A stretch of 64,000 nucleotides of DNA from Lepidodermella squamata. Lineage: Eukaryota > Animalia > Gastrotricha. The notes under the pieces were generated by a model that did no database searches, was not told where the DNA came from, and saw only the letters and a list, made by a program, of their open reading frames with translations. Each line of letters begins with the position of its first letter. Positions within the stretch are counted from its first letter, which is position 1. The translations under genes and the position numbers were made by a program. This document shows, in pieces, positions 233-36,993 of this stretch. The stretch is from positions 930,001 to 994,000 of the forward strand of contig JBLDXI010000033.1 in assembly GCA_047495785.1 (NCBI GenBank). The letters run 5' to 3'.

Positions 233-1075
233 ATGCACGAGAGGGGCAATTTCACGGACTTGAAGAAAATTGTTGCATCATGCAGGCGAGCATCAGCGGC
301 CCTAATTTCGTCAACTTCCCCTCTTTTAAGCCGACCAAACGGAAAGTCGAGAAAGCATCCGCATGAGAACCACTTTCACACCTGCGAGGTGCAGATCCTG
401 CGATCAACCTTTGATCACGTGAAGCAAATGGAGACTTTCCCTTGGGAGGTTCAAGACAGGTATGAATAAAAATATAGTAGTCCACTTTAAAATCAAAACA
501 TCCCTTATTTTGACAGCTTAGCAACTTCAAATCATGCCGAGATCGTTGCCAAGTGTTACAGATTTCAGAGTCGGCTCGTCGAGCTGCAAATGGATGCGGA
601 AAATATGAATTTAGCAACTATTATGATCAGCGTCCTCGAGCGATGCTTGGCTAAAATTCACAACCCAGCTAGCCTTGATGATGAAATCAATCAGATAATC
701 ACCCTTCATCGAGTTCTGGGCATTCATCCCAGGCTGACAGCTGCTATTCTCGAGGAAATCAAGCCTGTTGTATCGGCGCATCTAATATATGGCCACCTGT
801 GTATAGTTAAGGAGGAGAGTGAGCGTCGCCGGTCGTCCTACGCCGGAAAATATGTAGCACGCCAGCCTGTGGGCAGAACCAACTCGAACAACCACGCGAA
901 AGATATATTCAGCAAGATATTGCATTTTCGTCATCAAGAGAAGCCATCAAGTTGTCCGAACCTTCGCCAAGAATGTCTTACTTGCCGCACGTGGGATCGA
1001 TTCTTTGAATGCCTTATCAAGCGCTTCATAAAACCAACGGCGGAATGCAAAGGCAATAAGCCGCTCCTCTTTTAA
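233..1075 (+). CDS. Divergent globin-like protein G1 (2 exons: 233-459, 517-1075)
   Basis: Phase-2 GT-AG intron 460-516 joins an A/B-helix exon (EVQILRSTFDHVK..WEVQDS) to NLATIMISVLERCL-IHNP-IITLH(F8)RVLGI..CLTCRTWDRFF; homologous to eight other genes in the window. Confidence 0.75.
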
Positions 1076-1456
1076 AATGACTGAAAACGCACTCGTACTA
1101 CGTCATTTAGGCTACGATTCTTTCACCTCTCATTTTTTTCATTGAAATTCTATTCGTAAAAAGTAGCAATGCTCTATGAGCTATACATGGACCGTTGTAG
1201 CACTATAGATGAACCAATAAATCACATTGATTTAACGATTGAAGGATTTTAGTAGCCGGCGGGTCTCGCATTAAATTTGCATCGGATTCGCTCAGTTTCT
1301 ATCAGACACCTTAGAATAATAAAGAAGGTCGCATCTATTGGTTACAAGCCCGTTGATCGATTACGCCAGCCTCGCTGTGTTTTTTTCGCCTATTACAAAG
1401 AAACTTGCAGAAGGTGAAAAAACGAGCTGCACTTCGCCTGGCCTAGCAAATAGAAC

Positions 1457-2553
1457 ATGGCTTCCCGCGCCGAGTCCGAGGGCGGAGTAAGTGTCGCTGC
1501 GTCAGGTAAACCCCACAGTGAAGCTCCTTCGAACGTCAGTTCATTGCCTTCGATTGTCAAATCAATACACGGCCCTGGGGTCCGTTATTACTATCTAAGT
1601 GGTCAAAAGAAATACGACGATCGATTTTGGGATACCAAAGCAAATCTCGATCTTTACAACTGGCAGTTTCACAGAAATCGAGTTAAGCTTCGTAAGTTTA
1701 CTTTTAGAGTGATGTCCAGCTTAACACCATTTGTTTTCAGAGGGTAGTCACGTAGATGCAGATCTTCCAGCAGAATTTGTTAGGCAAGTTGAAATATTGG
1801 CTGATAGGGCGAAGCGAAAGAAGGCATTCGAGGAGAAGGAGATCGAAGAGAAAAATAAACTGCTTGCCGTATACAAACAGGGAGTCTCTCCTGATCCTTA
1901 CGCTTACAAATTGGAGCCGATTGTAGAGGCTAGGAGATCCTTCTAGTAAGGATTAATTTCGTCGGATGCATCTCTTACCTCTTTTGTTTTTCGTTCCCAT
2001 AGTAAAGAGAATTCAGAAGTCTTAAGGCAGCGGAGATCTGTGGAGCTCAGTGAAGAGAATAAGGTAATAGCTGGAAAGAATAAGAAAGCTATTCGATCGA
2101 TTCAATTTGACAAAGCGGAATCTTTTTATCAGGTAAAGCAAGCTTAAGTTCCTGAATTGCTTATTCCTTATTTTTCTGCATGTTGTGATTTTCAAGCACC
2201 ATCTGAAGCAAATGTATAAACTAACGCGATTCCCGGCTATCCAAAGCCAGCTGATAAAGGGTCAGATCTGCTTGCTTGATTTAACGCTGAGGAACCAGGC
2301 TAACTGGAGATCTCATGTTGCAGGTGAATCGACTACTCCCCGCGACAGCAAGGCGCCATCACAACTGGCGACGGACCGGTCATCTAAAGTCGAGAAACTT
2401 CCACGTGACATCGTCAATAAACATCCAGTTCTTGGTCATGGAGGACACCCTGAGAAGGACAGTGGCAAACGAAAGACTCTGGTTTCAGCAGACCCTCGGC
2501 ACACTCCGCCGGCGTCGCCCGAAGATGGAGATATCAGAAACGCGGCTTTTTAA
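1457..2553 (+). CDS. Hypothetical multi-exon protein, unknown function
   Basis: Frames join through short GT-AG introns (1692-1740, 1945-2002, 2133-2196, 2261-2323); AATAAA near 2634; no recognisable domain. Confidence 0.6.
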
Positions 2554-2679
2554 CAAAAACCCCGTGCAATAGTAGAAAACCGAGTGCATTTCCCGGTGAT
2601 CAAAAGTTACTTTGTTAGTATCTCGACAAGAAAAATAAATAGTTATGGAGAGATAATTCTTGTTTTATTGAAATACCAG

Positions 2680-3763
2680 CTACATTAAGCAGATTCTTGT
2701 TAAAAAGGGCAAATCCGAAGGCTTTGGCGGCTCGACAGAATTAGGACCCACTGGTTTTGTAAATTTATGCACTAGTAATGTCCTTAATGCTAAAACAGCG
2801 AAGGCCGCCAGGATGATACTCGCACCAACGATGCTGTAAGGATGCGGTATGACGCCTACAACAATTATCTCCCAAAAATACTGAAAAATCAACTCAGAGA
2901 TTGGATCGAGAGCTAAAAATGCGGGAGGGAGACTTTTTGACGCAAGCATATCCAGCGCAATTCTTCCACTGCCTAAGAGGCCTATGACTATGGTGGCTAC
3001 TCGAATATGCGTCTCGCATGGTGGGAGTCGAATGTCCCATACCAAGAAGAGAATCGTCGCGATCCAACCGCTAACAAAACCGTGAATCGTAGAGACGCTA
3101 GCTATTGGGATTTCCTTTAAGCACGCGTAAGTTGAATACATAATTGATCCTAGGAGTATTGAGCCGAACGCCAAGATGCATCCAACAACATCAGGCGGAT
3201 CCGAGTTGCTGAAAATGAAGTCTGGGCGGACAATGAATGCGGCTCCTTAAAATGAAAAAATAAAAAACCTCCTTAACGAAATGTAATTTCTAACCTGCAA
3301 CACAAGCGAAAAACAGTGGGAAATCAGTGAGACGCGGTCGTTGCCGCAAGAATGGCCAACTTATCATCATGGTTAAAAAAGGACCCATCGCTGTGATTGT
3401 TGCAAAATCTGGTAAGCGGATCCTTTGAATTGCATACAACGCAAGTCCGACCTTTCCTATTGCACTCATGCAACGCAATGTCAGAAATGTCCATACTCTT
3501 TTGTTGTAGCGTCCGAATTCGATGATAGGTTCGCTTTTATAGACAGCAATCGGCACTGCGGTGAAAAAAACCGTCCATTGCCGGATCATGAGAACAAACG
3601 CCCCAGGCAACGGGTCGGCGGCTTCTGATGAGGTCACTTTTTGGACGAAGACGTTATAGACAGCGCCGGAAAGGCCGGCAGAGATCACGCAGATGAAGCC
3701 GAACCACCATCGTAGGATGACGGAATTTTCCGGTATAACGTACCGTTTCCGGCGAAGAGTCAT
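2680..3763 (-). CDS. EamA/DMT family (SLC35G-like) membrane transporter; 5' end may extend further
   Basis: Two hydrophobic exons with EamA-type motifs (LTLRC..G, ATITAMGPFLT..SWPFL, FIVRPDFIFS, P.PYSIVGASII). Confidence 0.8.
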
Positions 3764-4462
3764 AATTTGAAAATCATCATCTGAAAACGAAAAAAGTGGA
3801 GTGGCCCCATATCGCTGCGAAGTTCATTATGCAGACATCTCACTGCCGGTCAGTACCCATGGGAGAAATTCTTATCGGGAATTTCTCGCAAATTTACAGC
3901 CCGGCATTGCGATAACAAAACGTACTCGTATTAAACAATGTCTTTGCGTACTTTTATTCAGATGACAACGGTAACAAAAAAGTTATAGTATTTAAAATTG
4001 CCAAAAACAGTCAAGTTTTTCTTGAGCTTTTTTACAGGTTAATTATCTCGATTTTTTCATACAGCTTTCTGAGCTACAAAATAAACTAAAACAAGGCATA
4101 CTGCGGTACCCGTCTGATTGGGGTTTTAATTTAACTAAATATGAGAATAATACTATCAGCTACTCACGAAACGATTTTTGCACATTTTGTTCCATGTCAT
4201 GGCCCTTCCATCAGGATAAAATAGCGAGAAAAATATGACGGGTCGGAACAAATATAGGTAAAATTAACTTATTATGCAAAAAATAAAAATAACAAAATTC
4301 AATGCGAATATCTGTTAATCGATGCGGAAACAACTAAATTGCCGTCATTTGATATTTACAGCGTAATTTTTCTAGCTATATTATGTACTCTGTTTTCGAA
4401 TATCGCAGATGCTATGTATGACAAGGAGGAAGGATCATATTTTAGGTAAACATGAAGTCTGC

Positions 4463-16750: not shown

Positions 16751-17323
16751 ATGCAGTCCTATCCATCAGCGACCAAGCTGAACGATGACGTCAATGTGTT
16801 CACGCAAATCGAAATAACCATGCTGAGGAATTCATTCAACGGCTTGAAGCCCAGGCATGAAGAGGTCGCACAGTTACTCCTTCAGAAGTAATTCAAATTT
16901 GTTCACTGATTTTTTAATTTACTTCATTTTTTCAGAATTTCAAATGTAAAAGGCGCGTTGGACTCATTCCGCCGAGCTACGAAAGGCGGCGAAGTCGCAA
17001 ACAGCTGGACTACAACCCATTTAGGAATGATAGTCATGGGCGGGATCGAACGCTGTCTGCTCCGAATCGATAATCCCAACAGTTTAAAAATGCTCATTGC
17101 CCGACTGACGAAGAGCCATACGGAGCGATTTCGAATCGACCCGATCATGATGGCGCGAGTGCTAGCCGCCTGCCAGCCTGCCATCCAGGCCGAAGTCAGT
17201 AAAAATTACGCTGTAAACAAGGCCAACTCAGACCCGGGGAGTCAGTTCGACCGCGCATCTGTCTGCGCTGCTTGGTCAAAGTTTTTCCGAGTTGTTTGTA
17301 ATTTATTTATGACAACTAAATAA
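16751..17323 (+). CDS. Divergent globin-like protein G2 (exons 16751-16887, 16936-17323)
   Basis: MQSY..FTQIEITMLRNSF..LLLQK | ISNVKGALDSF(CD1)..HLGMIVMGGIERCLLRIDNP..KSH(F8)TERF..AAWSKFF; phase-2 intron at B12. Confidence 0.85.
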
Positions 17324-17591: not shown

Positions 17592-18152
17592 ATGAAGTTT
17601 GAAAAGCTGCTCAGTGTGTCATGTAGAATTTGTCGACAAAAAGGCTTCCAGCACTTGACCGAGCTGAAAAGCGATGCCGACTGCTTGTATGCTCAAGTTT
17701 GCGGCTGCGTCGGCAAGGACGCTTACGTTCACTACGACTGCTTCAACAAGGTGATTCGGCGGCGAATTTCCTGCTTGGATACTTTCAACGACAACACGAT
17801 TATTTGTTGCGATAAATGCCGGAAACCGTTTCAATGCAGATATTTGCACAATTGGCGGCTTCGTTTCTTGTACGATCCATGCAGGTGGTTTTACATTTCA
17901 CTCATCGTCGGAAATTTACTGCTGATACCGACAGCGATTATCTGCTTCACTGAAACTGTTCAAAACATGATTTGCGGGGAGTTCAGAGATGATGCCAATA
18001 TCAAGTCATGCTGGCCATTCCCGTTCGGCATCGGTTGCATTCTGGTTTTGGGATTCCTTTGGGTCATCTTCTCGATTCTAGTTTCTCGCCGGCCTGTTTT
18101 TGTATTCTTACAGCCACCTGTTCAACGGGTCTCAACTGCTGATGTTAAATAA
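17592..18152 (+). CDS. RING-CH (RINGv/MARCH-like) membrane E3 ubiquitin ligase, intronless
   Basis: CRIC..C-G-C..YVHYDC..CDKC (C4HC3) followed by two hydrophobic segments. Confidence 0.75.
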   Translation: MKFEKLLSVSCRICRQKGFQHLTELKSDADCLYAQVCGCVGKDAYVHYDCFNKVIRRRISCLDTFNDNTIICCDKCRKPFQCRYLHNWRLRFLYDPCRWFYISLIVGNLLLIPTAIICFTETVQNMICGEFRDDANIKSCWPFPFGIGCILVLGFLWVIFSILVSRRPVFVFLQPPVQRVSTADVK

Positions 18153-20980: not shown

Positions 20981-21694
20981 ATGGGCAACGAAAAATCTAC
21001 GCTGAAGCATAGTATTACTCAGCCCAGTTTCACATATAACCCGCGAAAGGTTCGGCTGCGGGCTTTCAGCACTGAATCTGCTTCTCAAAGCTCGACGGAA
21101 CTTACTGGAGAAGTTCAAATCGGGCCTAAAGAATATCCATTCAGTGCAGGAGAAATCTTGACTCTGAGAGCCACATTTGAGAGACTTACCAAAAAACGCG
21201 ACTTGATTGCTATGGAAATTTTGGACAAGTACGTTAAAACTCGCTTATTGGTTTTTCATCATTTTTACTCTGTAATTTATAGAATTTCGAAAAATTCACA
21301 AATATCAGAGAAGTATAGGAAAGCGAATTATCGATTGGGTTGTTCAAGCACGGTTTTGAACTTGGGGTCCATTCTGGTATCGGGAATCGAGCGTCTCATA
21401 CTTCGCCTCGCGAATCCCGTCAAACTCGAAGCAACGATCGCCGAATTGCTGAAAAGCCATGAACAGCTTAAAATATCGCCAAAGCTCATGGTTACCGCGT
21501 TGAAGGAGGCGAGACCTATTATTTTAACGAATATCCTGCAGTGTCATAGTTGCCGCGGGGCGGCTGCATTGGAGCATGAACAAGTGCCTCGAAGCGTCAC
21601 AGGATGCCTTTTACCGACAGATTGCGGTACCTGTCAATGTTGGAACAAATTTTTCGACTACATTTGTTATTCAATTTCGACCATAATTTATTGA
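20981..21694 (+). CDS. Divergent globin-like protein G3 (in-frame 54-nt intron 21229-21282)
   Basis: MGNEKS start; FSAGEILTLRATF..EILDK | ISK; NLGSILVSGIERLILRLANP; KSH(F8)EQLKI; CHSC..CGTCQCWNKFF. Confidence 0.8.
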   Translation: MGNEKSTLKHSITQPSFTYNPRKVRLRAFSTESASQSSTELTGEVQIGPKEYPFSAGEILTLRATFERLTKKRDLIAMEILDKYVKTRLLVFHHFYSVIYRISKNSQISEKYRKANYRLGCSSTVLNLGSILVSGIERLILRLANPVKLEATIAELLKSHEQLKISPKLMVTALKEARPIILTNILQCHSCRGAAALEHEQVPRSVTGCLLPTDCGTCQCWNKFFDYICYSISTIIY

Positions 21695-22566: not shown

Positions 22567-23366
22567 TTAAGTAGTAAAAATAAAAATAGCATGATTTACA
22601 ACAGTTTTCCAGAGATGACAAGTATGGCAAACTTCAGATTTCGCTCCGGAGCACTGATCGCCGAAAGTTCTCGTTTCTGAGCTGCAGCTACTTGAAACCG
22701 GGCTGAGTTTTAGCTTCTGAAGAGACCATTCGGTTTTCAGGCTAGTTAGTTGTTTCGCATAGCACTCGTGATGAAGCTTGAAATACCGCATCAAAACGGG
22801 TCTAAAGGCCTTTAATGCCGGCGGGATGTTTTCCTTAGGGAGGCTTATGGATGCACGTCTTTTCCTCAAGTTTCGAATAGATCTCGCGAAAGAATCAGGA
22901 TTTGTTGATAGTTGTAAGCAGGATTCGATGGCATCGAAAAGAAGAGATGTCAGGTGAAGAATATCCCAATCCTCCGTATCCTTCGCCCTACGTGAAGCGG
23001 CAGTTGCCTCGAGTCCTTTTTTCTGGTCGTACCTGGCTCAGCCGATTTGCAAAAAATTAAACTATTTAATATATTAAACCGAAACCTTTCAAGAAGATCC
23101 GTTGCGATTTTATCTCGATCGGGTCTCATATTTTGATAGATTATTCGAACATCCAGTAGCTCCTGCTCTGAGATACCGAGGGCGCCTGAGGAGAGGTCGG
23201 CATCACCATGAAGACTTAATTGGTAGTCGTCGCGAAAGCTGCCAAAGGCCTGCAAATGGGTTAGCTCCTCCGAAAAATACGAAGGCATGTGCAGTAAAGA
23301 CTGAGCTAATGCTCGTTTGATGTGCGGGCTTTTCTGCTTTCGAGAATTAGACGATGCTGCACCCAT
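22567..23366 (-). CDS. Globin-like protein G4 lacking the proximal His (exons 23366-23086, 23032-22567)
   Basis: MGAASS start; ISEQELLDVRIIY..DLLER | YDQKKG..WDILHLTSLLFDAIESCL..NPDSF..RNLRKRRASISL..HHEC..CHTCHLW; phase-2 intron 23033-23085. Confidence 0.7.
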
Positions 23367-23932: not shown

Positions 23933-24265
23933 ATGAGCAACTTTCAACTGATGGTTCTCGTTATACTGGTCATCCAATCATTCGCTCTGAATGCCACTGG
24001 AAACAGGCGAAATCGATTTCCTAGACAGCGCACTGGCTTGGAGGACCTTGAGCCTGCAGTCCAAAATCGCATTGCTTTGGAGGATTTCCAACCCTCCAAA
24101 AAGCTGGTTTCAGTTAAGCGAAAATTAAGGCGGCTCTGCAAACGATGCGAGGATTCTGCTGAAACCAGGTCAAGAAAAAAGACTCCTTCAATACCTTCAA
24201 ATCGGTCTCCATCTCTATACTTCCGGAGTTACATGCAAAAGGCGCCAGATGAAGATCCGATTTGA
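23933..24265 (+). CDS. Putative secreted basic orphan peptide precursor
   Basis: N-terminal hydrophobic signal-like segment, several dibasic sites, AATAAA near 24395; no homology recognised. Confidence 0.45.
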   Translation: MSNFQLMVLVILVIQSFALNATGNRRNRFPRQRTGLEDLEPAVQNRIALEDFQPSKKLVSVKRKLRRLCKRCEDSAETRSRKKTPSIPSNRSPSLYFRSYMQKAPDEDPI

Positions 24266-24933
24266 GAGCAGTTGGCACACTCGCACAGACATTTTCAAAC
24301 TTTTGTAAGTTACATCAGTACAAGTTAGCGGCGCTGCATACCAGAATAACTTCATGTGAAGTACAGAATTGGCTTCATGTGACTTACCTGGCCTAATAAA
24401 GAGCGCTATTAGCTTGTTTGTGTCCAAGGTGACAAGTGACAAGTATTAAATGTGGTTCGCATGTTTCTACAATAAGCAAAAACAGTGGAAATTGGAAATT
24501 ATGATTTTTAATTGTCGCACCTGTCACCCACTTATACTGACGTAAACAAGCTAAAGTCCGATTATTTATCGACTCCGCTATCTGGGGATGAGTTCTTCTG
24601 TTGCTGTTTTTATGTATAAATGCCTAAAGATAGCCGCCCACCTTAAAGAGTTGTCGCATTTGCAATATTGCAATTTGCAATAACAAGTTCTGTTGTTAAG
24701 GAGGAATCTTCGTTATCTCTCTCATTGTTCCTGCCACTCAAGGTTCAGAGATCAGAGATCCATACATGCCTAAGCAACGATATCCATTAATAACTTCAGC
24801 TTCCTCAACAGTTTCGATCTTAGAGCTTTAGCTGAACGTCTCAGTAAAGGAAATATCACGTTTTAATTTAAAACTCCCAACATCAATTAAATGCGGAATC
24901 AATCCACTGAGTGTCATGTTTCATAGATGATTA

Positions 24934-26788
24934 TTAACCTGAGAATTTAAGAAGAGGCGGGCAGGCCATTTTCTTGTTAACCACGTCCATAACACAGTTA
25001 TAGCACAAGTTGAAAGTGCTGACTGGCTTGAAGTAAGTGTTGTTCTTCATGACAAAAGTCGAGTTGCTACTGTCGTACTTCGGAGCATAAGAGTCGATGT
25101 CCGCTTTATAGATGATGCCAAAAGCGACTGTTGCGACGAAAACACACAAGATGTACATCGCAAGGCCGATATTGTTTGCCATCTGCAGCTTTTCTTCGCT
25201 TCTCTTGGCGCGGCCTCTCGCCGCCATTTCAACCAAGGTACTCTGTCTCGACAGCGGTTCACTGATTTTCAGTTGATCATCCGGTACAACCTTCGTCTTT
25301 TTAGACCTTTTCAGAATCTTATATAGGTAAATTGTCGATAAAATGAGATAATAGGCGTTTTAAATAGAACTCACTGCCTCTGCAAAGAACTTTTTAACCC
25401 AGTAGAAGAACCGAACTGATTCATCTTTCTCAGCGTAGTCGACCAATTTTAGCAAAATTGATGCGTAGATCTATAACCAAAATAACTTATCGTCACTAAT
25501 CACTAACAGATTTTACATTAATGAGATACTTACAGAAGCAGCGATTGAGATGGCAAAAAGAGCTAAGAGAAGCTTAAACACATAAAATGCTAGGCATTAC
25601 GATCATCTTCAAAGTTGGATACTTACCCAGTATAAGGCTGGCATGGATTCCACATCGGCATTGGGCGGTAATGTGTTTACCACGTTACAGAAAATGACTG
25701 TGAGGGAGGCAAAAATAAACAAAAATTGATTGAAATTGAACATTTACCAAAGAACGATAGAGAAATGGTGAAGGAGATCTGCATTTTTTCATCACTTCCT
25801 GCTTCAACCAAGAAAATGCAGACGCCAGCAATGGCCAGTAGAATGATGGGCAGCATGATGCTGAGGAAGTAGAACTGAGGCTTTCGCACTATAACATACT
25901 CAATAATATATTCCTGAACCCCAAATCCGTAGCTCTTCAGATAGTTTCTGCTGCCTAGCAAGTCCCATTGCGGGTTAGACACGTAAAACTGTTAAGGCGG
26001 ATTTAAAAGTAATGTTTACGTTCCAGAGATAACCTGCCTGATCGCAAATCGGGAATTGAAGGTCAGTATTGAACAGAACAATGTTGTAGTCCGTCATGAG
26101 GATGAAATTGCTGAATGTTAGACATGATAAGTGAAAGTACGATTGGATCACATGAAACATACATAGCGCAGATTTGGGTATCATATGGGTATGAATAAAC
26201 GCGGAAAGTACTGCAGAAATATCAAAGATTTTATCTTTTGCAATACAATTTACGAACAATTACCAAGAGAGCCGATACTTGTTGAATAACCGCCACCAAG
26301 CCAACGATGGCGACATTATATCAACAGGGGACTTATCAATAGCGTTCCTCCAAGCTGCATAAGTTTTACTTCTATCATGTCCACAACATTTCATATGACT
26401 TACCATCAACATTCAGAACATTCCTGATAGCAATTTTCGGTGTCCACATCTTAGACGACCCGCCAGATTCGCCAATAGTGAATACAAACCCAGTCTTGTC
26501 AGGAACATTAGGCCCAGACGAAGAAACGTCCCACATGAATTCGATAAGAGCAGATAGGGATATTTCATTTTTCGCCTCGTTAACACTTTCGATGGCGATT
26601 ATGACAGGGTGGACTGCTATGCTGACAGTTTTACTCTGAAGCAAATTTATGGGTGGTATATTTGGATGGCGCAGAGTCTGAGCCTGAATTGACGCCGTAT
26701 CGTTATTGATAAAAACTGCGTACGGGTTATTGACAGCCGCCGACACGCTCGCAAATAGCGTTGCAAGTATTAAGCAAGCGTAAACCAT
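24934..26788 (-). CDS. Divergent Cys-loop ligand-gated channel subunit L1 (cation-type M2), multi-exon
   Basis: WTPKI (loop A region), spliced Cys-loop CTFRVYSYPYDTQIC, RKPQFY-M1, SDEKMQISFTISLSF M2, M4 followed by a Cys-rich tail. Confidence 0.88.
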
Positions 26789-27015
26789 CGTTTACAAAAC
26801 GAGAATTAAAAAAATTGTTTTAGGATGATTTATTTCTAGCCTACGCGGCCATACTGAAAAAACATCGATTCCCGAGAGATATATGGCTCGCCATTCATTT
26901 TCCGCTGAATCAAAAATTAGCCATTAAGCCTGGCCTTACTTTTGTAGTCATTTTATTTTTGAAATTGTAATGGTGCATTCGGATGAAAAGTTCTGTGTTC
27001 AATATAGCAGGCTAG

Positions 27016-28772
27016 TTATTTGCCAATACGACATGGCATGTCTTCATCTACGATTAGTCGATTCGAAGTTGCATTAAGACTGCATCCCATGCACTGGCTG
27101 ATATCGTTGACTGGTGGAAAGTAGGTTTTACCATTCAGGGAAAGAAGGCCTTTCAGATCTCCAGTAAGGTCACGCGGCACAATGTTGCCGAAACAGTCCA
27201 AAATCGAGGTGAAGAAAACAATTGACGAGATAAAGAACGTCAGACAGTAAATGACTAGTCCGATGACATTGGCATGGTATAGGCAGCAAGGCGTAATGGT
27301 AAACTTCGGGTTCGAACTGTTTTTTGAATGTTTATCAGGCTTAGCTTTCTGAAATCCAACTCAAAAACTCAGAGGATTCACTAGCTTTAAATTATTGCTT
27401 ACCAAATGATACGGGCTGGATTCAGGAATTGGTCCGTCGTAAAGAGATGGTACATTTAGATTTTGCGTGAAAAGGTTCGGGATAGCAGGCAGGGCAACAT
27501 CATTTCGTTGCAAGAATGTTTTAACCCGCTGCTCCATTTCATACTGCTTGATGCTAAATGAAAATCGGCCCAAGATCGCCGATGCAATAGCAGAAATCAG
27601 TGATAGCGTGAACAGGCTCAAGATATACTTGAAAAGACACATATGTCAGAAATGAATCGAGAAATTTCAGCAGATTAATTTACGTAGTAAAGAAGAGGAA
27701 AGAAGTCTGCATTTGACGGTAAATTTGTGACCAAGTTCGAGAAGACAAAGAAAAAATTTAGCAGTACAGTGAATGAAACACCCATTTTCTCTTCAGATGC
27801 TGGCGGTAAAATGAAAATTATTGCTCCGGAAACCCCGAGAAGGATTGTCGGAATGACTACGCTAAAGCAAAAATGATCACAGAATTGGTATTTAGTATTA
27901 GGAAGGGGAAAAATTTGAACCCAAACCTGACAATATAAAACAGGGGTTTCCGCTTCAGAACGAATTCAAGCCGCATTATTTTGACCGTATTGAATAGCTG
28001 AATGGAATGCTGGCGACTTGCGATCAACTCCCATTGTGAGTTGGGAAGATATAAAGCTGTGCACACAGGATCGATCACACTGCGAAACAAGCTTCATATA
28101 GTCAAATTGTTGGCAATATCAGCGAAATTCTTACTCCTTTACAAATCCCACGTATTCCGACTCAGCTGTAAGAGAGATGTTCATGTCACAGACCTGATAG
28201 TCCCACGGAAATGACGTCAGTTTTAGCGAGCATTTAAGTAAGAATGGCATGTAAAAGCGCCATTTTACGTTTCCGAGGAAATCTAACTCCAAGGGTGAGT
28301 AAGACGAAACATCGCGGAAGTCGTTCAGATTCAGCAGGTTTAGAATTGTAAGCTTCGGGGTCCAGGCTGATGCCTGGCCGTTGCTAATGCCCATTGTTGG
28401 CGCTAGGCAAACGCCAAGTTCGTCGTTAACCCACGTGAAGCCATCTCGCGCTAGGTTGTACTGAAGTTCGAGGGCTCCGTTGATCAGCACAGTATTACTT
28501 GCCTCCTCGACATTCTGCACAGAGGCTATGTAGAAGTACGGCTGAAGGTCGATTATCTTCATCCCGCTAGAAACAGGTGGGATATTTGGGTCACTATTAG
28601 CAGTTTGCTCGAGCCTTTGTTTAATAACGGCTTGGTAATTAAACACTCCATCGAATTTAGATGCAATATCTCGCGCCAAGGTTGCGTTATTTTGCAGGTT
28701 CTTGCAATCATAAGACAAGCAAAGAATGTCAGCATGAAGACCAGCTAACACAAGGACGTAAAGGATTTTCAT
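27016..28772 (-). CDS. Divergent Cys-loop ligand-gated channel subunit L2 (cation-type M2), multi-exon
   Basis: WTPKL, Cys-loop CSLKLTSFPWDYQVC, KRKPLFY-M1, PPASEEKMGVSFTVLLNF M2, Cys-rich tail. Confidence 0.9.
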
Positions 28773-29060
28773 AGTTTTTCAGATTTTACGCCATCATGCC
28801 AGAAGCAAACCAAGCCAAGCCCTCACAAAGGCACTCAAGGGCCTTTGAGATTCGGTTAAGTGCATCATTCAGTGGGGAGCGCGAAAAAACATGGAATGTT
28901 TAAAAATGCATAGGATTCGAATTTCCAAATGTTCAAACTTTGCAGGAAGCAATAAATCAAACGTCCCTCGGAAGTTTTGCAACGTGAACTTTCGGCGCCT
29001 TTAACCTGAGAAAAGAATTTCTGTCCCAATTTCGACCTACTATGTGATAATTTTGCTGTT

Positions 29061-29677
29061 TTATTCACGACATGCTTTGGAGACGACAATCAAGAACTTT
29101 TCCCAAATCTGGGCATTGTTTTGAGAGTGGCGTTTGAAAATCGGAATAATGTGAAGGACAAGAAGAGACATTGCAGCGCCATTCAGGCCGAAACGTTGCA
29201 GGTGGGTTAAGCAGAACTGTTTTACACCTTCTCGCAAACCTGCAACATTCCCGGATCGTTGCACGCATTTTTCAACTCCTGTTAAAATGATGTTTCCGAA
29301 ATTGAGAAAATTCGGACCAATACTTGATATAACAAGTTGGGCTCTCGCTTTTGCGTAGAATGAAGCAATAGCTGGAATTGAGTTGATCCTATAAGTAAGA
29401 AAAATTAAATAGGATCCTGGAACTTCAAGGTGATTTCTCACTTTTCCGCTATTTCAGCAGCAATTATACCACGGTGAGATTTCATGTTTTCGAAACTTGA
29501 TCGAAGTTGTTGTTGCTCTTGAGCAGAGAATAGTTGGTTACCAGCGGTTTGTTCGGAAGATGCTCTGCATATCACAGCCGCTATCCGAACGGATTGAATC
29601 AAGTGCTTCGTTGCCAAGCCGTGGCTTTCATCACCAAGCTTAGAACTTTTCTCTAAATGCCCACAAGCGGATCCCAT
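29061..29677 (-). CDS. Divergent globin-like protein G5 (exons 29677-29442, 29388-29061)
   Basis: First ATG gives MGSACG; FSAQEQQQLRSSF..EIAEK | INSIPAIASFY; NFGNIILTGVEKCV; LTH(F8)LQRFGL; IWEKFL. Confidence 0.8.
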
Positions 29678-30259
29678 TTCAAATTCCCCAACTGAATGAA
29701 CTGAGCTAGCTCGCCGATGAAAGTCAATTTGAGTCACTTAAGCTCGATTATTATTGAGCTGTGTCTCAAATTTCAGCAAAGTACGGAAAGCACGCGATCG
29801 GAAATACATACCCATAAACTACAGCCAAAGCTAATACTTGTGAAGGGCGAAGCTTCCGTGATTTTTAACATCAAGCCCACGTAAAGAAAATGCTTATGGC
29901 ATGTCCGCACTCCTGCGTGCATTATTGGTATTAAAATTTGAAAAATGATACCTCCAACAAATGATAAGACAACTCTCGAACTAATTAGAGTCACACGAGC
30001 AAGATTAGTGCGTATATTGTCTGATAACAGTCAAATTGCGGTTGTAAATAACAATTCATAGGCATTTCCGGTAAAAATACGTGGGAAGTCAAATTTTTAC
30101 ACGTCGTAGCTATTCATCATATCAAAATAGTGATGTATTAGCCTTCTTTCATTCCTAAGCAACAAGTTGATTCGAAAAATATTTTTTTAAGATTAGCCGA
30201 ATTAGCAATCAGTCCATATGCTGATGAATCACGCCTTGTTGTTTTCTGCGCAGTATTTC

Positions 30260-30939
30260 TCAAGCTAAAATAAGGCGTTTGCTATTTGCCGAGAATATTC
30301 TTATAACGATATCAAAAAATTTGCTCCAAGCGGCCTGAACGTCCTGCACGGGGTACAAGCTACGCTCACTCTGTCGAATAGCTTGCTGAATGATGACTGG
30401 TTGAGACGCTCGAAGAGCATCGACCATCATAAAAGTGGGGACGTCGTAGAATTGAACGTGTCGCTCTCGCATGCCTTCAATTGCGCGAGCAAGAGATTGC
30501 AGATTGTCGACCCTGAGCAGGCAACGCTCGATTCCGCCGAGAAGTATCGTGCCCAAGATGGCTCCAGCCCACGCATCGCCCATCACTGAGTAACGAACCG
30601 CGTAATTCCTGTACTTCTCCCGCGCTCCTATCACCGAAGCTACGCTATTTTAACATCAAGAATAGAATCAAGGCGCTCAAGAATAGCCTTATCATACCTG
30701 ATGTGTATCTCGAGACAATCTTCGCTAGTATTTCGCTGCTTGATGCAATTGAAAGTGCCGCGTAAAATCGCGAGTTCCTCACTGGAGAACAGTACTTCAG
30801 GCTCAGTTTGGGTTGTTTCGTCAATTGATAGCCTATGACCTCCCGAACCCGAACCTTCCTGCTGTTGGTGGTAGACAGGGCAGCCACCCTCTGCGTTGTA
30901 AAGAAGACTTTTGCTTCGTGTAAGACCGTAAGATTGCAT
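30260..30939 (-). CDS. Divergent globin-like protein G6 (exons 30939-30698, 30644-30260)
   Basis: FSSEELAILRGTF..EIHIS | VASVIGAREKY; ILGTILLGGIERCLLRVDN; ERH(F8)VQFYDV; AAWSKFF. Confidence 0.85.
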
Positions 30940-31124
30940 CCTTCCTACTATAAATTCGGTGCCAAAAATGAGCTGGCTTTTAGTTTCGCAGAATTTATTC
31001 AGCTGTTAAATATACCGCCGGGGATTATTAAATTTAGTTAAAATTATGTAGCAAATGTGACCATATAATAAAAATACGGGTATAATTTAATTCACACCGG
31101 ATGATTTTAATAATAGTTTTTTCC

Positions 31125-31893
31125 TCAACCAGTTGATGGGCTGACAATTAGACCGCAGACAACTCGGAAAAACTTTGGCCAAGACCGGCAAATTTCGCAT
31201 GTCTCTTCGGGATTCTCCTGGTTTTCGTCGTGAGTATGGCACTGGAGCAGAGCTTCTATAATGCTTGGCTCACAGACTCGCAGAGCTCCAGCCATCATTA
31301 TTGGATGCACTTGATAAAAAGAAAATGTTGTATATAATATAACATAATAATAATATATTAAACATACCGTTATACTGCTCGCGGTGAGTTATCTTTAAGC
31401 GCCTAATCATCGCACGTAAACTTTTTGGGTTGTCAATTCGCAAAAGGCAACGTTCGATACCGCTCATCAATATTATTCCGAGATTTACAGCTGACCATGA
31501 GTTTCCGATATCATGCAGCGCACTTTCGTAACTTTGAACAGCCCCCTCGACAGTGGAAACCCGCTGTAGAAGTTGGAGAGCAGTCTCGTATGGGCACTTC
31601 TTGATGTGTTCAAACGTTTTCCGCAACGTCTCGACTTCTTCGGCTGTGAAATCGTCGTCAACATCTTCGAAGTTGACCGTCACTGCGTCATTTGATGTGT
31701 ACGACAGCGATTTGGCCACACTAGTACGCCCTGATCCAGAAATCATCGGACATAAGTCATTGCGCTTTCGCGGATCTTTCTCGTGGATGAAGGCTGAATG
31801 CTGATTTTTGCTGATGGGGCAGGCACTTTTCGAAACTGGCAACCGGGTTTCATTGACGTGGTTTGGCTTTGCTTTAGCGATATTAGCGCCCAT
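31125..31893 (-). CDS. Divergent globin-like protein G7 (exons 31893-31368, 31309-31125)
   Basis: MGANIA start; FTAEEVETLRKTF; NLGIILMSGIERCLLRIDNP; ITH(F8)REQYN | VHP; CHTH..CEICRSWPKFF. Confidence 0.85.
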
Positions 31894-33482
31894 TTCCAGT
31901 AAGTGAATGACCTCGTACGAAAAATGATAAAATTATATAATATGTAGCCTAGACATTAAGGACAACAGAAGACAGATTTTCGGATTATGAAAAGGGCACT
32001 TCATCCTATTTCCTACCGTGGACATGGAATTTCTGAACTGTAATGAGAATCTAGCGCTTTGGCAAATGTTTCGAATCCTTACAAACGCCAAAGAGGATCA
32101 TGTGATTTATCGAGAGGGCACTCAATGGCAACTGTCAGCTGCTGATGAATAAAAAGACATAAGTTGGCGAAACTTAATTAGGAATTACTAGCCGACCACA
32201 CTTGGTTAGTGCGCAATTAACCAATCATGCATGCTATATTGGGTAGCGTTTAGCGTTCAGCAAAGCGGCTTGTTGCAGCCATAAACCGGTGTTCTCCTAT
32301 TACAAAGGACTCTACACTGAATCGATGTTGAAAGCAGTTTTTCCAAATTAGGTGGTTTGACTGTTGATATGTCAGCTTATTAGGTGTACAGAAGTTTAAA
32401 ATTAAATGACTCTGGCTGTCATAGCTTTCACCATTGCTCTGCACTGGCCCTAATCTAATGCTTAAATTACAAGACTTGTTAGATATAAACTAGCTATGAT
32501 AAGCATGTCACATCGTTAACCTTGCGTTAGATGCAGTGATCCAAGAACAGCTTGAACTGATAACAGGGACCTACCCCGAAGATCATAAGAGAAACATTTT
32601 CGAGACGGCAGGTTGGTTTCCAGAGTGGCGTGCTGCAGGGTTCGACTCTGCTCGTCATTTTGCACACCCCAGCGCTCCTGGCGGTGAGTTTGATGCATAT
32701 GACGATGATTTGTGTTGGGCAGCAGTCCGCTCAGGGGCTACTTACCCAGAGGACGACATAGGCCCGCTCAGGCGGAAGTGTATCACGTGGCTGCTTGGAC
32801 CGGTTACTAAAGGGAGCAATTTAACGCTCCCGTCATTGCGAGGCTCGAACTCGGCGGCGCTGTGGCCCCTGGCCCCGCAAGTGTCAGTCCTTAGAATTAG
32901 GTTCGATGAGATGTTGCTTTGAAGTCCCACATCGATCACGTGCTTAATTGCTGTGGGCAAAAGTTGGTTCATGGTTCAACTCCGGCGGCCAGGGCTGTCT
33001 TTCCCATGGAGCCGTACCTCATATGCCTGGAACTCGTTCGTTCCGGCGACACCTTTGGCTCGTGCGCTTTGCGTCTGCTACGAAGACCCAGCTCCGCCGC
33101 CTTGACGTGCTCCGAAATAGCTGGCACCAGACATTACCAAAATTTTCAATGTAAATCCCGCGGCAATTTATCTTTCAGTTTTTGAGAATTGGGTGAAAAC
33201 TGCGGTGATTTTTCAGGTGCCGCCTTTACTCGAGTGCGGCCCTTATCTTTCACCAAGTTGCGATTTTATTAGGCAACATGGCATTTTCCCCCAAGATTAG
33301 CTCGCAGGCGTACGCATTAAGCAGGGACTGCATGTTATTCAGTCACTTTCCGACCAACCTAAATTGAATTTAATCTGCTAGCTGCTAGCATCTGTTGGCA
33401 TAGGTACTTGCAGAAGGTGTCAAGAGTCTAACAAGGGTTGCAGAGGCGACGAAAAAATGTTGAGGATTAATCACTTCAGTGT

Positions 33483-33631
33483 GCGAAGTAGGATCCGGGA
33501 GCTGAGGTGTTTTCTAGTTGTTTTCTGGGACCCAGCCGAAGAAACCAAAGGGTCCCCTCTGGTTTTTTAGCCGTCACCTGGGAGGAGTCCCGGAGCTGGG
33601 GTGTCGCGCGTTGCGCACCCCTGTACTTCGC
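33483..33631. ncRNA. Candidate structured RNA or element of unknown class
   Basis: Nested complementary segments GCGAAGTA/TACTTCGC, CCGGGA/TCCCGG, AGGTG/CACCT, GGGACCC/GGGTCCC and GGGGTG/CACCCC in a GC-rich island. Confidence 0.35.
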
Positions 33632-34522
33632 TTGAGATGTGCGGTGATTGAACGAGTGCAGCCTATATTAACGTACAAAGCTAGGAACAAGGGTGATTTT
33701 GCAGCGATTCTTCAGGTGCGGCCTTAATACTGAAAATTACAGTATGCTGAAATTCGACTTCAAGCAGTATGTGCGGTGTAACTGAACAGTCCAACAATTT
33801 AGGTTAAAGTTGTTCACCTGTCTTTTCGTCAATCTCGAACTCGAGGAGCCCATTGTTGTGCGATCAAGGAAAATCCGCTCAAAATGTCAGACTTTTTTCT
33901 AAAAAAACATTTGAAGAGGCGAATCTAAAAATGCCGACGACTCTTACAATCATCTTCAGCTCGTTTATTCGCTCGAATAACGGGGGCGATGCAACTTTCA
34001 TTTTTGATCAAAAAATACCCCCATTTCTATAGGAAGACTTTAAAACTGCTGTTTACCGACTTTTCGAGTAAAATGACATGCTGGGGACGACGAAACGCGT
34101 TGCCGGCAAGCTACTCCCAAGATTCGATTTTAACGAGAATTTCAGAAAAGTTTACCGCTAACTATAGCTATAGCATGGAGAAAACATAACTTTGAGAAAT
34201 TCCTCTCATCTTTAAGGAGTAATTGAAATATTGCGAGGACAAAATATTGTCCATCGTCCGTTAAAGAAGCGAACAAAGAAAAACTGGTCCGAGGCTACCG
34301 GCGGGGAAAGAACTAAGACCGCTGCTGGGAGCTTCGTAACTACAAAATCTGCTCTGGTTTCAACTCTGCTCTGGACCTGAGAGCCGTGATTGTTCCCAAG
34401 TGGCTGAAAATGTCTTTGTAAATAAAGAAGGGGGAGAAATAACATCAGCGTAGAAACAAGTGTATTTATTTTAGAATTTAAAGACAACGATAAACAATGT
34501 AAATTTTGAAGATAATCTGCCT

Positions 34523-35591
34523 TCAAGAAGAAGTCGTATGTAACAGATTAACTGTCTGCCTGAAAAATTTTAGCCACGCGTTCTGAACCTGATCGGAGGT
34601 GTAAGCGCACCGCGGCGTTGATGCACATGCCTTGACGATTTGATGGATGAATACATGCTGCGTGGCGCGTAGTGCCTGAGCCATCATGCGGGCGGACACA
34701 TTCATGTGTGAGTGATTATCGCGCTGCAAATGCACGGCGGCTTGATACTTCTTCAAATTATCGATCCGCAGCAGGATTCGCTCGATGCCAACACATACCG
34801 TTTGACCAAGGTTCTTGGAAGACCACCCGCTGCTGTTTGAGTGAATTTTGCAACGTTCTTCAAAGCGATCTTTCGCACCAGGCACAGTAATTACACTAGA
34901 GGACATACATAAAAATAAAAATAAAGCAATCCACCTTAAAAATTCATTACCAATTGTGGATGATTGTTTCTAAATCACTTCGCTGGAGTTTCAAAGTTGC
35001 GAAGGTGCTTCGAAGTAATGCCACCTCCTCTGACGTGAACTCTTCTATCGGAACCTCGGGATCATCGTCCAAATGCTGCTGGATAATGATGCAAGGTATT
35101 TTGAAATTGCAACTGTGACTACAATGCGCTCCATTGCTATGCGATCTGTGAGCATGAGACTTGCAAGCCGCATTGAGGTGAGACCGTTCTGAGTCATTAG
35201 AAGCCGGAGCGCTGTTGTTGTTGCAGAGGTACGGATGATGGCTGCTATGGGTGATGCATGGCGACAGGCTGTGGCACGCATTGCCGCATTTAGGATCATT
35301 ATCAGAACCATTCAGCATTTCGTCAGATGCAGCAAGTCTATTAAAATGGCTGAAGCTGTTGCGGTGATGATATAACAGAAGGCTAGAGTCTGGCAAGTCT
35401 AGATTGTTATCGACAGCGAACAAGCTCGTTGTATTAGCTAGATCGAACAGATCGAGTTTAGGTTTTTTGAATTGATTGCTCAGATCGGTGATAGAATTGC
35501 GCCACTCGCTAATGCTGTTTTTACCCTGCGTGTACAACTCGCGTACTGGCGAGCGCAGACTGTGCGCCTTCTCGGCGATAAAATCGAACAT
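34523..35591 (-). CDS. Divergent globin-like protein G8 with a long His/Cys-rich N-terminal extension (exons 35591-34951, 34895-34523)
   Basis: FTSEEVALLRSTF..TIIHNC | VITVP(C2)GAKDRF(CD1); NLGQTVCVGIERILLRIDN; DNH(F8)SHMNV; NAWLKFF. Confidence 0.85.
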
Positions 35592-36262
35592 CTTCAGACG
35601 CCGTAGACAGGGCGCGAAAATTCCTTAAATTATCTATTTGTGAGAGAAATAAAACACAGTAAAAAATTATCGACCTTTCCCATCGCCGTTGTATTAGCAG
35701 TATTAAAGCGACTCTTAAGAAACGCCTACTTACAAAGCGTGTGAAATCGTTAGTACAAATTCCCTTGCGAGAAGCCCTTATATGTTACCGAGAAGCAGTC
35801 ATGCAGTTGACAACTCGAGCTGATAGTCCCAGCATCAGGTTTGTCATATTCGATTAGTATGAGTTCGTATTTACTCTACGTTAGTTTTTCCCGTAAAATC
35901 TCCAGTTGTTGCACCAAGATAAACCCGAAAAATCTTGGTCAAAATGAGGGTCAAAAGATCAGACGGACGGATAATGACAAGTTTTCAGAGGAAAAAACGG
36001 GGACTCGGAAGAGATATTATCATGTTACTTCACCGTCATAAACAGAGCTTGAAAATTGATTATCTGCGATCGAAGATTTAAGACTGCGGGGCTTATGCCT
36101 CTGTTGATAGATTACTCTCATTCTAATTAATCGAAAAAATGCAAATTTCCTGATGCATTAGCGATGATCAAAGTCGGCGATAAAAGCCTAGCTTATCATG
36201 CTGATTAAAAATACTGAAAATGTGCGAGTGAGGCGGTTTTATTCAAGACCATTTTAGACATA

Positions 36263-36993
36263 TCAGTCAATAACAGTGAAATGGCGGCAGACGACGGTAA
36301 AGAACTTGGTCCACACGAAGCAGATTTCACAATGCGAATCGCCGTGGGAACGATGTGATCGCTTGAGTTCGGTCATGAAAGGCTTCTCCGCCTGTCGCAG
36401 CGCTTGCGTCATCAAGTCACCGGAAACCTGATATGACTCACGATGGCCGGATTTCAGTTTTGATATGAGCGTTCGTAGAGATTCCGGGCTGTCGATACGA
36501 AGCAGGCACCGCTCAATGCCGCTCATTAGGATCATGCCGAGGTTCATAGCAGACCAGGAATTTCCTATGTCATGGCGGTTCCGCTCGTATGTATCAGTAG
36601 CCCCTTTAATCTCCGAGATCCTGAAATATGCTAATTACAAAAAAATCAAATGACGTCATTAACTCACGTCTTCAGCATCTCTAAAGCGACCTCATCGCGA
36701 TTTTTCTTGACCTCTTCGAAAGAATCTCGTAAAATGCGTACTTCCTCTTCGGTGAAACGGTCGTCGTAAGATGACGTGCATGTTCCGTTCGTCAATGTTG
36801 ACTCTTCGCTTTTGCGTTGCGCGTTTGCGTCATCTTCTTGAAAGTTATGTGAGGTAATTTTAGGTGGCGAAGCGCGAGCTAATTGAGATCGTCTTAAAAT
36901 TGTCGCCACTCCAGCGCTGAAAGAACGCTTGATGCCAGACTGGCTCCTGCTTGAAGTGACTGACTCGTTCTGTTTTGTTTCCGAGGCTCCCAT
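36263..36993 (-). CDS. Divergent globin-like protein G9 (exons 36993-36668, 36620-36263)
   Basis: MGASET start; FTEEEVRILRDSF..EMLKT | ISEIKGATDTY; NLGMILMSGIERCLLRIDSP; SGH(F8)RESYQV; SHRSH..HCEICFVWTKFF. Confidence 0.85.

What the first reader, a model, noticed from the sequence alone, without database searches (positions are those of the whole stretch)
728..36400. Candidate zinc site grafted into the globin GH corner: H-x-[C/H]...C-x-x-C-x-x-W
Seen in five paralogs. The G-helix end reads GHLC (G1), CHSC (G3), HHEC (G4), CHTH (G7) and SHRSH (G9). A loop of very variable length (a few to about 60 aa) follows, then CLTCRTW, CGTCQCW, CHTCHLW, CEICRSW and CEICFVW entering the H helix. G2, G5 and G6 lack both halves together, and G8 has neither motif (only a different Cys pair). 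Inference: co-occurrence of four potential ligands across a length-variable loop suggests a Zn (or Fe / redox disulfide) site clamping helices G and H. I do not know this feature in described globins.
Basis: partly seen in the sequence, partly recalled or inferred. Interest (0 to 1): 0.82.

Follow-up and report, generated by a model that had tools for sequence, protein, structure and literature searches.

The report
Globins with a probable zinc clasp
Five of nine neighbouring, very divergent globin genes of an unidentified compact-genome animal keep four zinc-type residues (His, Cys/His, Cys, Cys) where helices G and H meet, most likely a metal clasp at the base of a floppy loop that I found described for no globin; the metal itself is untested.

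Summary
The window holds nine two-exon globin genes. G7, G8 and G9 are transcribed and spliced as modelled.

- **The motif.** G1, G3, G4, G7 and G9 carry His-x-[Cys/His] (His-x-x-His in G9) at the end of helix G. They also carry C-x-x-C-x-x-W at the N-cap and first turn of helix H. The loop between the two halves is 4 to 57 residues long. G2, G5, G6 and G8 lack both halves.
- **Conservation.** Only 11 of 143 aligned columns are invariant among the five. The three that are specific to them are the His and the two Cys.
- **Relatives.** An exhaustive search of 1.84 billion proteins found 26 family members, all from one related unnamed organism. In the 35-member family, 22 have C-x-x-[C/H]. Eighteen of those 22 also have the helix-G pair, against 2 of the 13 without it.
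- **Ligand swaps.** Cys and His replace each other at ligand positions (C-x-C ... C-x-x-H). That fits a metal site and not a disulfide.
- **Loops.** Loops over 30 residues occur only in motif bearers.
- **Fold.** AlphaFold2 and Foldseek give a confident globin fold and a confident GH turn. No coordinates were available, so the geometry was not measured.

Best reading: a structural Zn(II) clasp, confidence about 0.6, with no metal evidence yet. I found no description of such a site in globins. The scan had already reached the same reading on another stretch of this genome (s1-410285).

The parts
233..1075 (+). G1 globin gene (exons 233-459 and 517-1075). Motif bearer: GHLC at 791-802, 57-aa loop, CLTCRTW at 974-994.
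   Evidence: Gene model, motif coordinates, profile hit. The start codon is uncertain because the gene lies near the window edge.
16751..17323 (+). G2 globin gene (exons 16751-16887 and 16936-17323). No motif; it keeps only the second Cys (ASVCAAW).
   Evidence: Pfam Globin 23.3 bits against a cutoff of 22. It nests with G7, G9, P0002 and P0003 in the tree.
20981..21694 (+). G3 globin gene (exons 20981-21228 and 21283-21694). Begins MG (N-myristoylation signal). CHSC at 21542-21553, 23-aa loop, CGTCQCW at 21623-21643.
22567..23366 (-). G4 globin-like gene (exons 23086-23366 and 22567-23032). Begins MG. HHEC at 22762-22773, 44-aa loop, CHTCHLW at 22609-22629. It lacks the proximal His (Arg instead) and the CD1 aromatic residue.
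   Evidence: Very long branch in the trees.
29061..29677 (-). G5 globin gene (exons 29442-29677 and 29061-29388). Begins MGSAC. The GH region is deleted and there is no motif.
30260..30939 (-). G6 globin gene (exons 30698-30939 and 30260-30644). No motif; helix H starts with DVQAAW.
31125..31893 (-). G7 globin gene (exons 31368-31893 and 31125-31309, with the intron at the start of helix G). Begins MG. CHTH at 31230-31241, 10-aa loop, CEICRSW at 31179-31199.
   Evidence: An X2 contig runs from 31310 straight into the end of exon 1, which shows the splice.
34523..35591 (-). G8 globin gene (exons 34951-35591 and 34523-34895). No motif. It has a His/Cys-rich N-terminal extension.
   Evidence: The splice joint 34895>34951 is present in X2 and X3 contigs. 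P0015 is its ortholog-like relative and also lacks the motif.
36263..36993 (-). G9 globin gene (exons 36668-36993 and 36263-36620). Begins MG. SHRSH at 36344-36358, 4-aa loop, CEICFVW at 36311-36331.
   Evidence: The splice joint 36619>36667 is present in X2. AlphaFold2 model of the exon-2 piece.

Best explanation
The nine genes encode cytosolic globins of a very divergent, lineage-specific family. Several are probably anchored to membranes by N-myristoylation.

In five of them, four residues most likely bind one Zn(II) ion. These are a His at the last turn of helix G, a Cys or His two (in G9 three) residues later, and the two Cys of C-x-x-C at the N-cap and first turn of helix H. The ion would tie the end of helix G to the start of helix H. 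This clasp would keep the G-H helical hairpin closed at the base of the GH loop, so the loop can grow to 20-100 residues and vary freely without loosening the fold.

**Shown:**
- the genes, and for G7, G8 and G9 their splicing and transcription;
- the globin fold;
- the position of the residues at the two helix ends;
- their family-wide conservation, co-occurrence and Cys/His interchange.

**Inferred:** that a metal is bound, that it is zinc, and that its role is structural.
For: 1. **Specific conservation.** The three invariant columns specific to the five motif bearers are His, Cys and Cys, at 16-52% overall identity.
2. **Relatives.** In 35 family members from two organisms, 22 have C-x-x-[C/H] at W-6/W-3. 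Eighteen of these also have a [H/C]-x(1-3)-[H/C] pair at the helix-G end, against 2 of 13 without it (Fisher p = 2e-4). The other four have one His there plus an extra Cys or His just before C-x-x-C, for example CHCDLC and CSCVNC.
3. **Cys/His interchange with the ligand count kept.** P0008 and P0012 read C-x-C ... C-E-I-H. The second position is Cys in G1, G3 and G4 and His in G7 and G9.
4. **Probable joint losses.** G2 nests in the G7/G9/P0002/P0003 group (support 90/93) and keeps one relic Cys. P0023 nests in a well-supported group with P0009, P0011 and P0022.
5. **Placement.** AlphaFold2 ends helix G at Ser88 in G9 and His168 in P0003. It starts helix H right after the first Cys (Cys97 and Cys176). 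pLDDT in this region of P0003 is 93.
6. **Loop length.** GH loops over 30 residues occur in 12 of 22 motif bearers and 0 of 13 others (p = 9e-4).
7. **G4.** It has lost the proximal His and the CD1 aromatic residue but keeps all four ligands.
8. **Compartment.** Five of nine begin M-G-x-x-x-[S/T/A/G], so they are made in the reducing cytosol. By established knowledge, structural disulfides are unusual there and zinc-thiolate sites are common.
Against: - No metal has been measured.
- The tools give no model coordinates, so the ligand distances are unknown.
- Spacing at the helix-G end varies (H-x-C, H-x-H, H-x-x-H, C-x-C), and four members show only one clear ligand there.
- The association statistics are not corrected for shared ancestry. 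The phylogenetic pair test had only two well-supported pairs (p = 0.5).
- All relatives come from one other organism.
- Motif-less members read V-Q-x-A-W, like ordinary globins, so the direction of change (ancestral with losses, or gains) is unresolved.
Confidence: 0.6

Rival explanations
1. A metal-free redox switch. The C-x-x-C at the N-terminus of helix H forms a reversible disulfide, as in thioredoxin-type motifs or the regulatory disulfides of neuroglobin and cytoglobin. The nearby His residues tune the thiol pKa.
For: C-x-x-C lies at a helix N-cap and first turn, the classic position for a reactive thiol pair. Regulatory disulfides are known in Ngb, Cygb and GbX (review PMC7475203).
Against: P0008 and P0012 replace the second Cys by His (C-E-I-H), so they cannot form this disulfide. 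This reading does not explain why a second ligand pair on helix G is kept and lost together with C-x-x-C. There is no thioredoxin fold.
Confidence: 0.13
2. A redox-active iron site that relays electrons to or from the heme: either mononuclear Fe of rubredoxin type, or a 2Fe-2S cluster with mixed Cys/His ligation as in Rieske proteins or mitoNEET.
For: Four Cys/His ligands, with 3Cys+1His or 2Cys+2His sets. C-P-x-C knuckles occur in P0002 and P0003. Electron-transfer roles have been proposed for membrane-bound hexacoordinate globins (titles and abstracts listed).
Against: The spacing is neither the Rieske one (C-x-H ... C-x-x-H) nor the CDGSH one, and the fold is all-helical. The ligand set varies between members more than is usual for Fe-S sites. 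By general knowledge of globin structures, the GH corner lies far from the heme iron.
Confidence: 0.07
3. No intramolecular site. The Cys and His are conserved for another reason, such as a partner-binding surface, an intermolecular metal bridge (dimerisation), S-acylation, or lineage-specific sequence inertia.
For: No metal or geometry data exist. All family members come from two related organisms, so shared ancestry inflates the statistics. The pair test is underpowered.
Against: Sequence inertia is unlikely at 16-30% identity, where almost everything else has changed. Cys/His interchange with a constant ligand count and loss of both halves together in G2 point to one cooperative site.
Confidence: 0.2

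Closest known systems
N-myristoylated membrane-bound globins (vertebrate globin X; C. elegans GLB-26 and GLB-12)
   Same: A globin domain with N-terminal extensions that begin M-G-x-x-x-[S/T] (five of nine here; G5 also has Cys5). A non-respiratory, possibly redox or signalling role is plausible. The family profile weakly matches GLB-12 (4bja, E = 0.11).
   Different: No specific sequence relation to GbX or the nematode globins was found. Those globins are not described with a Cys/His cluster at the GH corner (no mention of zinc in the 2020 review). E7 here is Leu.
Regulatory disulfides of neuroglobin (CD7-D5) and cytoglobin (B2-E9)
   Same: Added Cys residues in a globin that could couple redox state to structure.
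   Different: The location differs (GH corner rather than the CD/D or B/E regions). There are four ligands including an invariant His. Cys-to-His substitutions exclude a disulfide in some members.
Zinc clasp of CD4/CD8 tails with Lck (C-x-C plus C-x-x-C around one Zn)
   Same: A minimal site built from two short ligand pairs on separate segments. P0008 and P0012 even read C-x-C ... C-x-x-H. The presumed role is to hold two segments together.
   Different: The Lck clasp is intermolecular and all-Cys. Here the site would be intramolecular, within a globin fold, and would use His as well.
Classical zinc-finger ligand geometries (His pair at the C-terminal end of a helix as in C2H2; Cys pair at the N-terminus of a helix as in treble-clef fingers)
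   Same: Each half of the motif sits where those fingers place ligands. This rests on established knowledge; here only the secondary-structure positions were tested.
   Different: There is no zinc-finger fold. The two halves belong to two long helices of a haem protein and are separated by 4-100 residues.

Membership tests
Globin superfamily (3-on-3 globin fold, Pfam PF00042) | Significant sequence or profile similarity to known globins | tested here: met
   The paralog profile against PDB gives Hb beta 3bcq_B at E = 5.6e-5 and a full-length match to Hb mu at 3e-4. The 45-row family profile matches 70 PDB globins at E <= 0.01, best 2.8e-6. Single sequences mostly escape Pfam: only G2 (23.3 bits, cutoff 22) and P0013 (30 bits) pass.
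Globin superfamily (3-on-3 globin fold, Pfam PF00042) | Predicted fold superposes on solved globins | tested here: met
   The P0003 model has domain pLDDT of 93-98. Its Foldseek top hits are all globins (Lucina HbIII TM 0.73, cytoglobin, Spisula nerve Hb; probability 1.00). For the G9 exon-2 piece nearly all listed hits, including the top 19, are globins (TM about 0.6).
Globin superfamily (3-on-3 globin fold, Pfam PF00042) | Proximal His (F8) and aromatic CD1 residue | tested here: met
   Both are present in eight of nine paralogs. G4 has Arg at F8 and no CD1 aromatic residue. The F8 alignment to Hb is shown.
Globin superfamily (3-on-3 globin fold, Pfam PF00042) | Haem binding | not testable with these tools
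   This needs expressed protein and spectroscopy.
Globin superfamily (3-on-3 globin fold, Pfam PF00042) | Ancestral intron positions B12.2 and G7.0 | tested here: inconclusive
   Eight genes have one phase-2 intron at the B/C junction, which is compatible with B12.2. G7 has one phase-1 intron at the start of helix G, near G7.0 but in another phase. The relatives P0002 and P0003 are intronless.
N-myristoylated membrane-bound globins (GbX-like) | N-terminal M-G-x-x-x-[S/T/A/G/C/N] signal | tested here: met
   Present in G3, G4, G5, G7 and G9. The start codons are from my gene models. The G7 and G9 mRNAs are partly covered by RNA-like contigs.
N-myristoylated membrane-bound globins (GbX-like) | Orthology to globin X or to nematode GLB-26/GLB-12 | tested here: inconclusive
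   There is only a weak profile match to GLB-12 (E = 0.11). The exhaustive search returned no named GbX.
Structural zinc site (clasp or finger type) | Four conserved Cys/His ligands in two pairs | tested here: met
Structural zinc site (clasp or finger type) | Cys/His interchange at ligand positions with the ligand count kept | tested here: met
   G1, G3 and G4 have Cys where G7 and G9 have His. P0008 and P0012 read C-x-C ... C-x-x-H.
Structural zinc site (clasp or finger type) | Tetrahedral arrangement of donor atoms in 3D | not testable with these tools
   Model coordinates are not returned. Only secondary structure and pLDDT are known.
Structural zinc site (clasp or finger type) | Stoichiometric bound zinc | not testable with these tools
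   This needs purified protein.
Thioredoxin-type redox C-x-x-C | Thioredoxin fold, with both Cys indispensable | tested here: not met
   The fold is a globin fold. The second Cys is His in P0008 and P0012.
Cytochrome c haem-attachment motif C-x-x-C-H | His immediately after the second Cys | tested here: not met
   Only G4 (CHTCH) and P0009 (CQLCH) have it. The others read C-x-x-C-[R/Q/F/Y/I/K...].
Rieske or mitoNEET 2Fe-2S sites | C-x-H ... C-x-x-H or CDGSH spacing in the respective fold | tested here: not met
   The spacing and the fold both differ.

The most novel reading that the evidence does not exclude
The site is not merely structural. It is a zinc-thiolate (or iron) switch that couples the redox, NO or metal state of the cell to the conformation of the G-H hairpin. 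Through that it would affect haem coordination, or the exposure of the long GH loop, in a large lineage-specific family of membrane-anchored signalling globins. That would be a new regulatory principle for globins.
Probability: 0.12. Interest if true: 0.85.

Novelty: new variant of a known kind. Interest (0 to 1): 0.62.

Why it matters
Globins are among the best-studied protein folds, and I found no report of a second, non-haem metal site built into the fold. If confirmed, the clasp would show how an old fold can carry long, fast-evolving loop insertions. It would add a possible zinc or redox control point to non-respiratory, membrane-anchored globins, whose functions are still an open question. 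It would also mark out a large hidden gene family, spread over several arrays in this genome, that standard domain searches mostly miss.

Tried and rejected
- **Word-index protein searches.** A search with G3 and one with the paralog alignment found nothing. A search with the 45-row family alignment returned only two members already known. So the family's size rests on the exhaustive search.
- **ESM Atlas.** Neither the search by features nor by shape gave anything usable.
- **Pfam on single members.** Mostly negative.
- **Measuring ligand distances.** Impossible, because no model files are exposed. I therefore make no geometric claim.
- **Phylogenetic tests.** The nine-gene tree is unresolved. 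On the 35-gene tree the trait needs about 8 changes, but only 2 are forced by well-supported branches. The independent-pair test had 2 usable pairs (p = 0.5). Direction of change was not resolved because the tree has no outgroup root.
- **Cytochrome-c type C-x-x-C-H, haem-regulatory Cys-Pro, and Rieske/CDGSH readings.** Rejected on spacing and on rarity within the family.
- **Whole-domain fold of a window paralog.** Spliced proteins cannot be given by reference, so I folded the G9 exon-2 piece and the intronless relative P0003 instead.
- **Organism.** Not identified. Run and organism names are coded and the relatives sit on unnamed metagenome contigs. Gene content (receptor tyrosine phosphatase, Cys-loop channels, ANF-receptor family protein) points to an animal.
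Full report
**What is in the window**

Six-frame reading and splice-site inspection give nine genes, G1 to G9, between 233 and 36993. Each has two exons and one GT..AG intron of 47-58 nt. Eight have the intron at the B/C-helix junction in phase 2. G7 has it at the start of helix G in phase 1. A profile built from the paralogs finds exactly these nine copies in the window and nothing else.

Contigs of two public runs cover only the exons. They carry the joints 34895>34951 (the G8 intron) and 36619>36667 (the G9 intron). One contig runs from 31310 straight into the end of G7 exon 1. So G7, G8 and G9 are transcribed and spliced as modelled. The other six gene models rest on sequence alone.

**They are globins, but very divergent ones**

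- Single sequences mostly fail Pfam. Only G2 passes the Globin cutoff, at 23.3 bits against 22.
- The paralog profile matches haemoglobin chains in the PDB: E = 5.6e-5, and a full-length match to Hb mu at 3e-4.
- A 45-row family profile matches 70 PDB globins at E <= 0.01. The proximal His and the helix-H Trp align as expected.
- An AlphaFold2 model of the G9 exon-2 piece (pLDDT 83) finds globins as its top structural matches.
- A model of the intronless relative P0003 (domain pLDDT 93-98) does the same, with TM 0.73 to Lucina HbIII and probability 1.00.
- Eight of the nine keep the proximal His and an aromatic CD1 residue. G4 has lost both.
- Five (G3, G4, G5, G7, G9) start with an N-myristoylation signal, M-G-x-x-x-[S/T/A/G].

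| Paralog | Helix-G end | Loop (aa) | Start of helix H |
|---|---|---|---|
| G1 | GHLC | 57 | CLTCRTW |
| G3 | CHSC | 23 | CGTCQCW |
| G4 | HHEC | 44 | CHTCHLW |
| G7 | CHTH | 10 | CEICRSW |
| G9 | SHRSH | 4 | CEICFVW |

G2, G5, G6 and G8 lack both halves. G2 keeps only the second Cys.

In the models helix G ends at Ser88 (G9 piece) and His168 (P0003). The first Cys is the residue just before helix H, and the second Cys lies in its first turn. In the alignment to vertebrate haemoglobin the C-x-x-C falls on positions H2 and H5, and the Trp on H8.

**More than chance**

The five motif bearers are 16-52% identical to each other. Only 11 of 143 ungapped columns are invariant among them. Eight of those are conserved in the whole family. 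The three specific to the five are the His and the two Cys. With Cys plus His at 7.6% of residues, that is roughly a 4e-4 event. The figure was worked out after seeing the pattern.

**Relatives elsewhere**

The first two word-index searches found nothing. The exhaustive HMMER search of 1.84 billion representatives found only 30 proteins.

- Four are ordinary multi-domain haemoglobins; the one that carries a name is from the snail Biomphalaria.
- Twenty-six are family members on unnamed metagenome contigs.
- The five I traced (P0002, P0003, P0005, P0015, P0017) lie in the same four samples. One contig shows a similar small array of these globins beside a Cys-loop channel gene.
- I take the 26 to be one related organism, with GC about 38% against 42% here.

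**Census of the 35 family members**

- 22 have C-x-x-[C/H] at W-6/W-3. One more has C-x4-C.
- 18 of the 22 also have a [H/C]-x(1-3)-[H/C] pair at the helix-G end, against 2 of 13 without C-x-x-C (Fisher p = 2e-4).
- The remaining four have one His there plus an extra Cys or His just before the C-x-x-C (CHCDLC, CSCVNC).
- Ligand types interchange. The second position is Cys or His, and P0008 and P0012 read C-x-C ... C-E-I-H.
- Loops longer than 30 residues occur in 12 of 22 motif bearers and in none of the other 13 (p = 9e-4).

**Phylogeny**

The trait is scattered over the tree and needs about 8 changes. Two cases look like losses:

- G2 nests among G7, G9, P0002 and P0003 (support 90/93) and retains one relic Cys.
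- P0023 nests in a well-supported clade of bearers and retains the His pair.

Only two changes are forced by well-supported branches, and the independent-pair test is underpowered (p = 0.5). The tree is unrooted. The motif-less members read V-Q-x-A-W like ordinary globins, so I cannot say whether the motif is ancestral to the family.

**Mechanism**

The best reading is a structural Zn(II) site that clasps the end of helix G to the start of helix H.

*Shown:*
- four conserved ligand-type residues in two pairs, located at two helix ends that the connecting GH turn brings together;
- Cys/His interchange;
- probable joint loss of both halves;
- retention in G4, which looks haem-less;
- the association with long loops.

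*Inferred from established knowledge:*
- His pairs at helix C-termini and Cys pairs at helix N-termini are standard zinc-finger ligand positions.
- N-myristoylated proteins are cytosolic, where zinc-thiolate sites rather than structural disulfides are the rule.

*Not shown:* any metal, or the geometry. The tools return no coordinates.

**Rivals**

| Reading | Main objection | Confidence |
|---|---|---|
| Metal-free C-x-x-C disulfide switch | Contradicted in members with C-x-x-H | 0.13 |
| Iron or Fe-S redox site | Spacing and fold do not fit known types | 0.07 |
| No intramolecular site at all | Unlikely at this divergence, but not excluded | 0.20 |

**Comparison with what is known**

The nearest relatives in kind are the N-myristoylated membrane-bound globins (globin X, C. 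elegans GLB-26 and GLB-12) and the disulfide-regulated neuroglobin and cytoglobin. The nearest chemistry is the C-x-C plus C-x-x-C zinc clasp of CD4/CD8 with Lck.

Four full-text searches combining globin terms with zinc, C-x-x-C or structural-zinc terms returned no paper on a zinc or C-x-x-C site in a globin. A 170,000-character review of globin diversity from 2020 never mentions zinc. The library holds only open-access papers, so this is not proof of absence.

**Earlier scan notes**

The scan had already noted the same motif on other stretches of this genome. One follow-up (s1-410285) reached the same 'probable zinc clasp' reading. I formed and tested the reading on this window independently. 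New here are:

- the transcript evidence;
- the second-organism census;
- the Cys/His swaps;
- the loop-length association;
- the fold models.

**Verdict**

This is a new variant of a known kind.

Noticed in passing
window 20981, 23366, 29677, 31893, 36993 (start codons of G3, G4, G5, G7, G9): Five of the nine globins begin M-G-x-x-x-[S/T/A/G], an N-myristoylation signal. G5 (MGSAC) also has a Cys that could be palmitoylated. Several relatives (P0004, P0005, P0007, P0013, P0025, P0028) also begin MG. The family looks membrane-anchored, like globin X.
   Followed up: partly
window 22567-23366 (G4): G4 has Arg in place of the proximal His and lacks the CD1 aromatic residue, so it probably cannot hold haem. 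It still keeps an intact reading frame, an MG start and all four clasp ligands. Its branch is very long. Its expression was not checked.
   Followed up: partly
window 34951-35591 (G8 exon 1): G8 lacks the clasp but has an N-terminal extension of about 190 residues rich in His, Cys, Ser and Asn, with runs such as H-x-H and C-x-H-x-C. This could be another metal-binding region. An RNA-like contig covers it.
   Followed up: no
window 31309-31368 versus the other eight introns; L001 and L002: The intron position differs between paralogs. G7 has its only intron at the start of helix G (phase 1), while the others have theirs at the B/C junction (phase 2). The relatives P0002 and P0003 in the other organism have no intron at all.
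   Followed up: partly
window 33450-33650: A short high-copy repeat lies between G7 and G8. Summed contig depth is about 13,760 against about 100 nearby, with many partial contigs and joints. It is probably a dispersed short repeat or a miniature transposon.
   Followed up: no
window 25677-28772 and 41419-42021; L002 8202-8789; L005 7423-8496: Cys-loop ligand-gated channel gene pieces (Neur_chan_LBD) lie beside the globin arrays, both here and in the related organism. This may be conserved neighbourhood, or simply two expanded families interleaved.
   Followed up: partly
window, E-helix codons of all nine genes (for example G9 around 36530): When aligned to haemoglobins, the distal E7 position is Leu in most members, preceded by Asn (His in G2 and G4). 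The conserved motif is N-L-G-x-I-L-x-G-I-E-R. The distal pocket is therefore apolar, unlike that of O2-carrying vertebrate globins.
   Followed up: no
window 17592-18152 (+): A 186-aa open reading frame between G2 and G3 has several C-x-x-C pairs and a Cys/His pattern followed by hydrophobic stretches. It resembles a membrane RING-CH type protein, but has no Pfam match at E <= 0.001.
   Followed up: no
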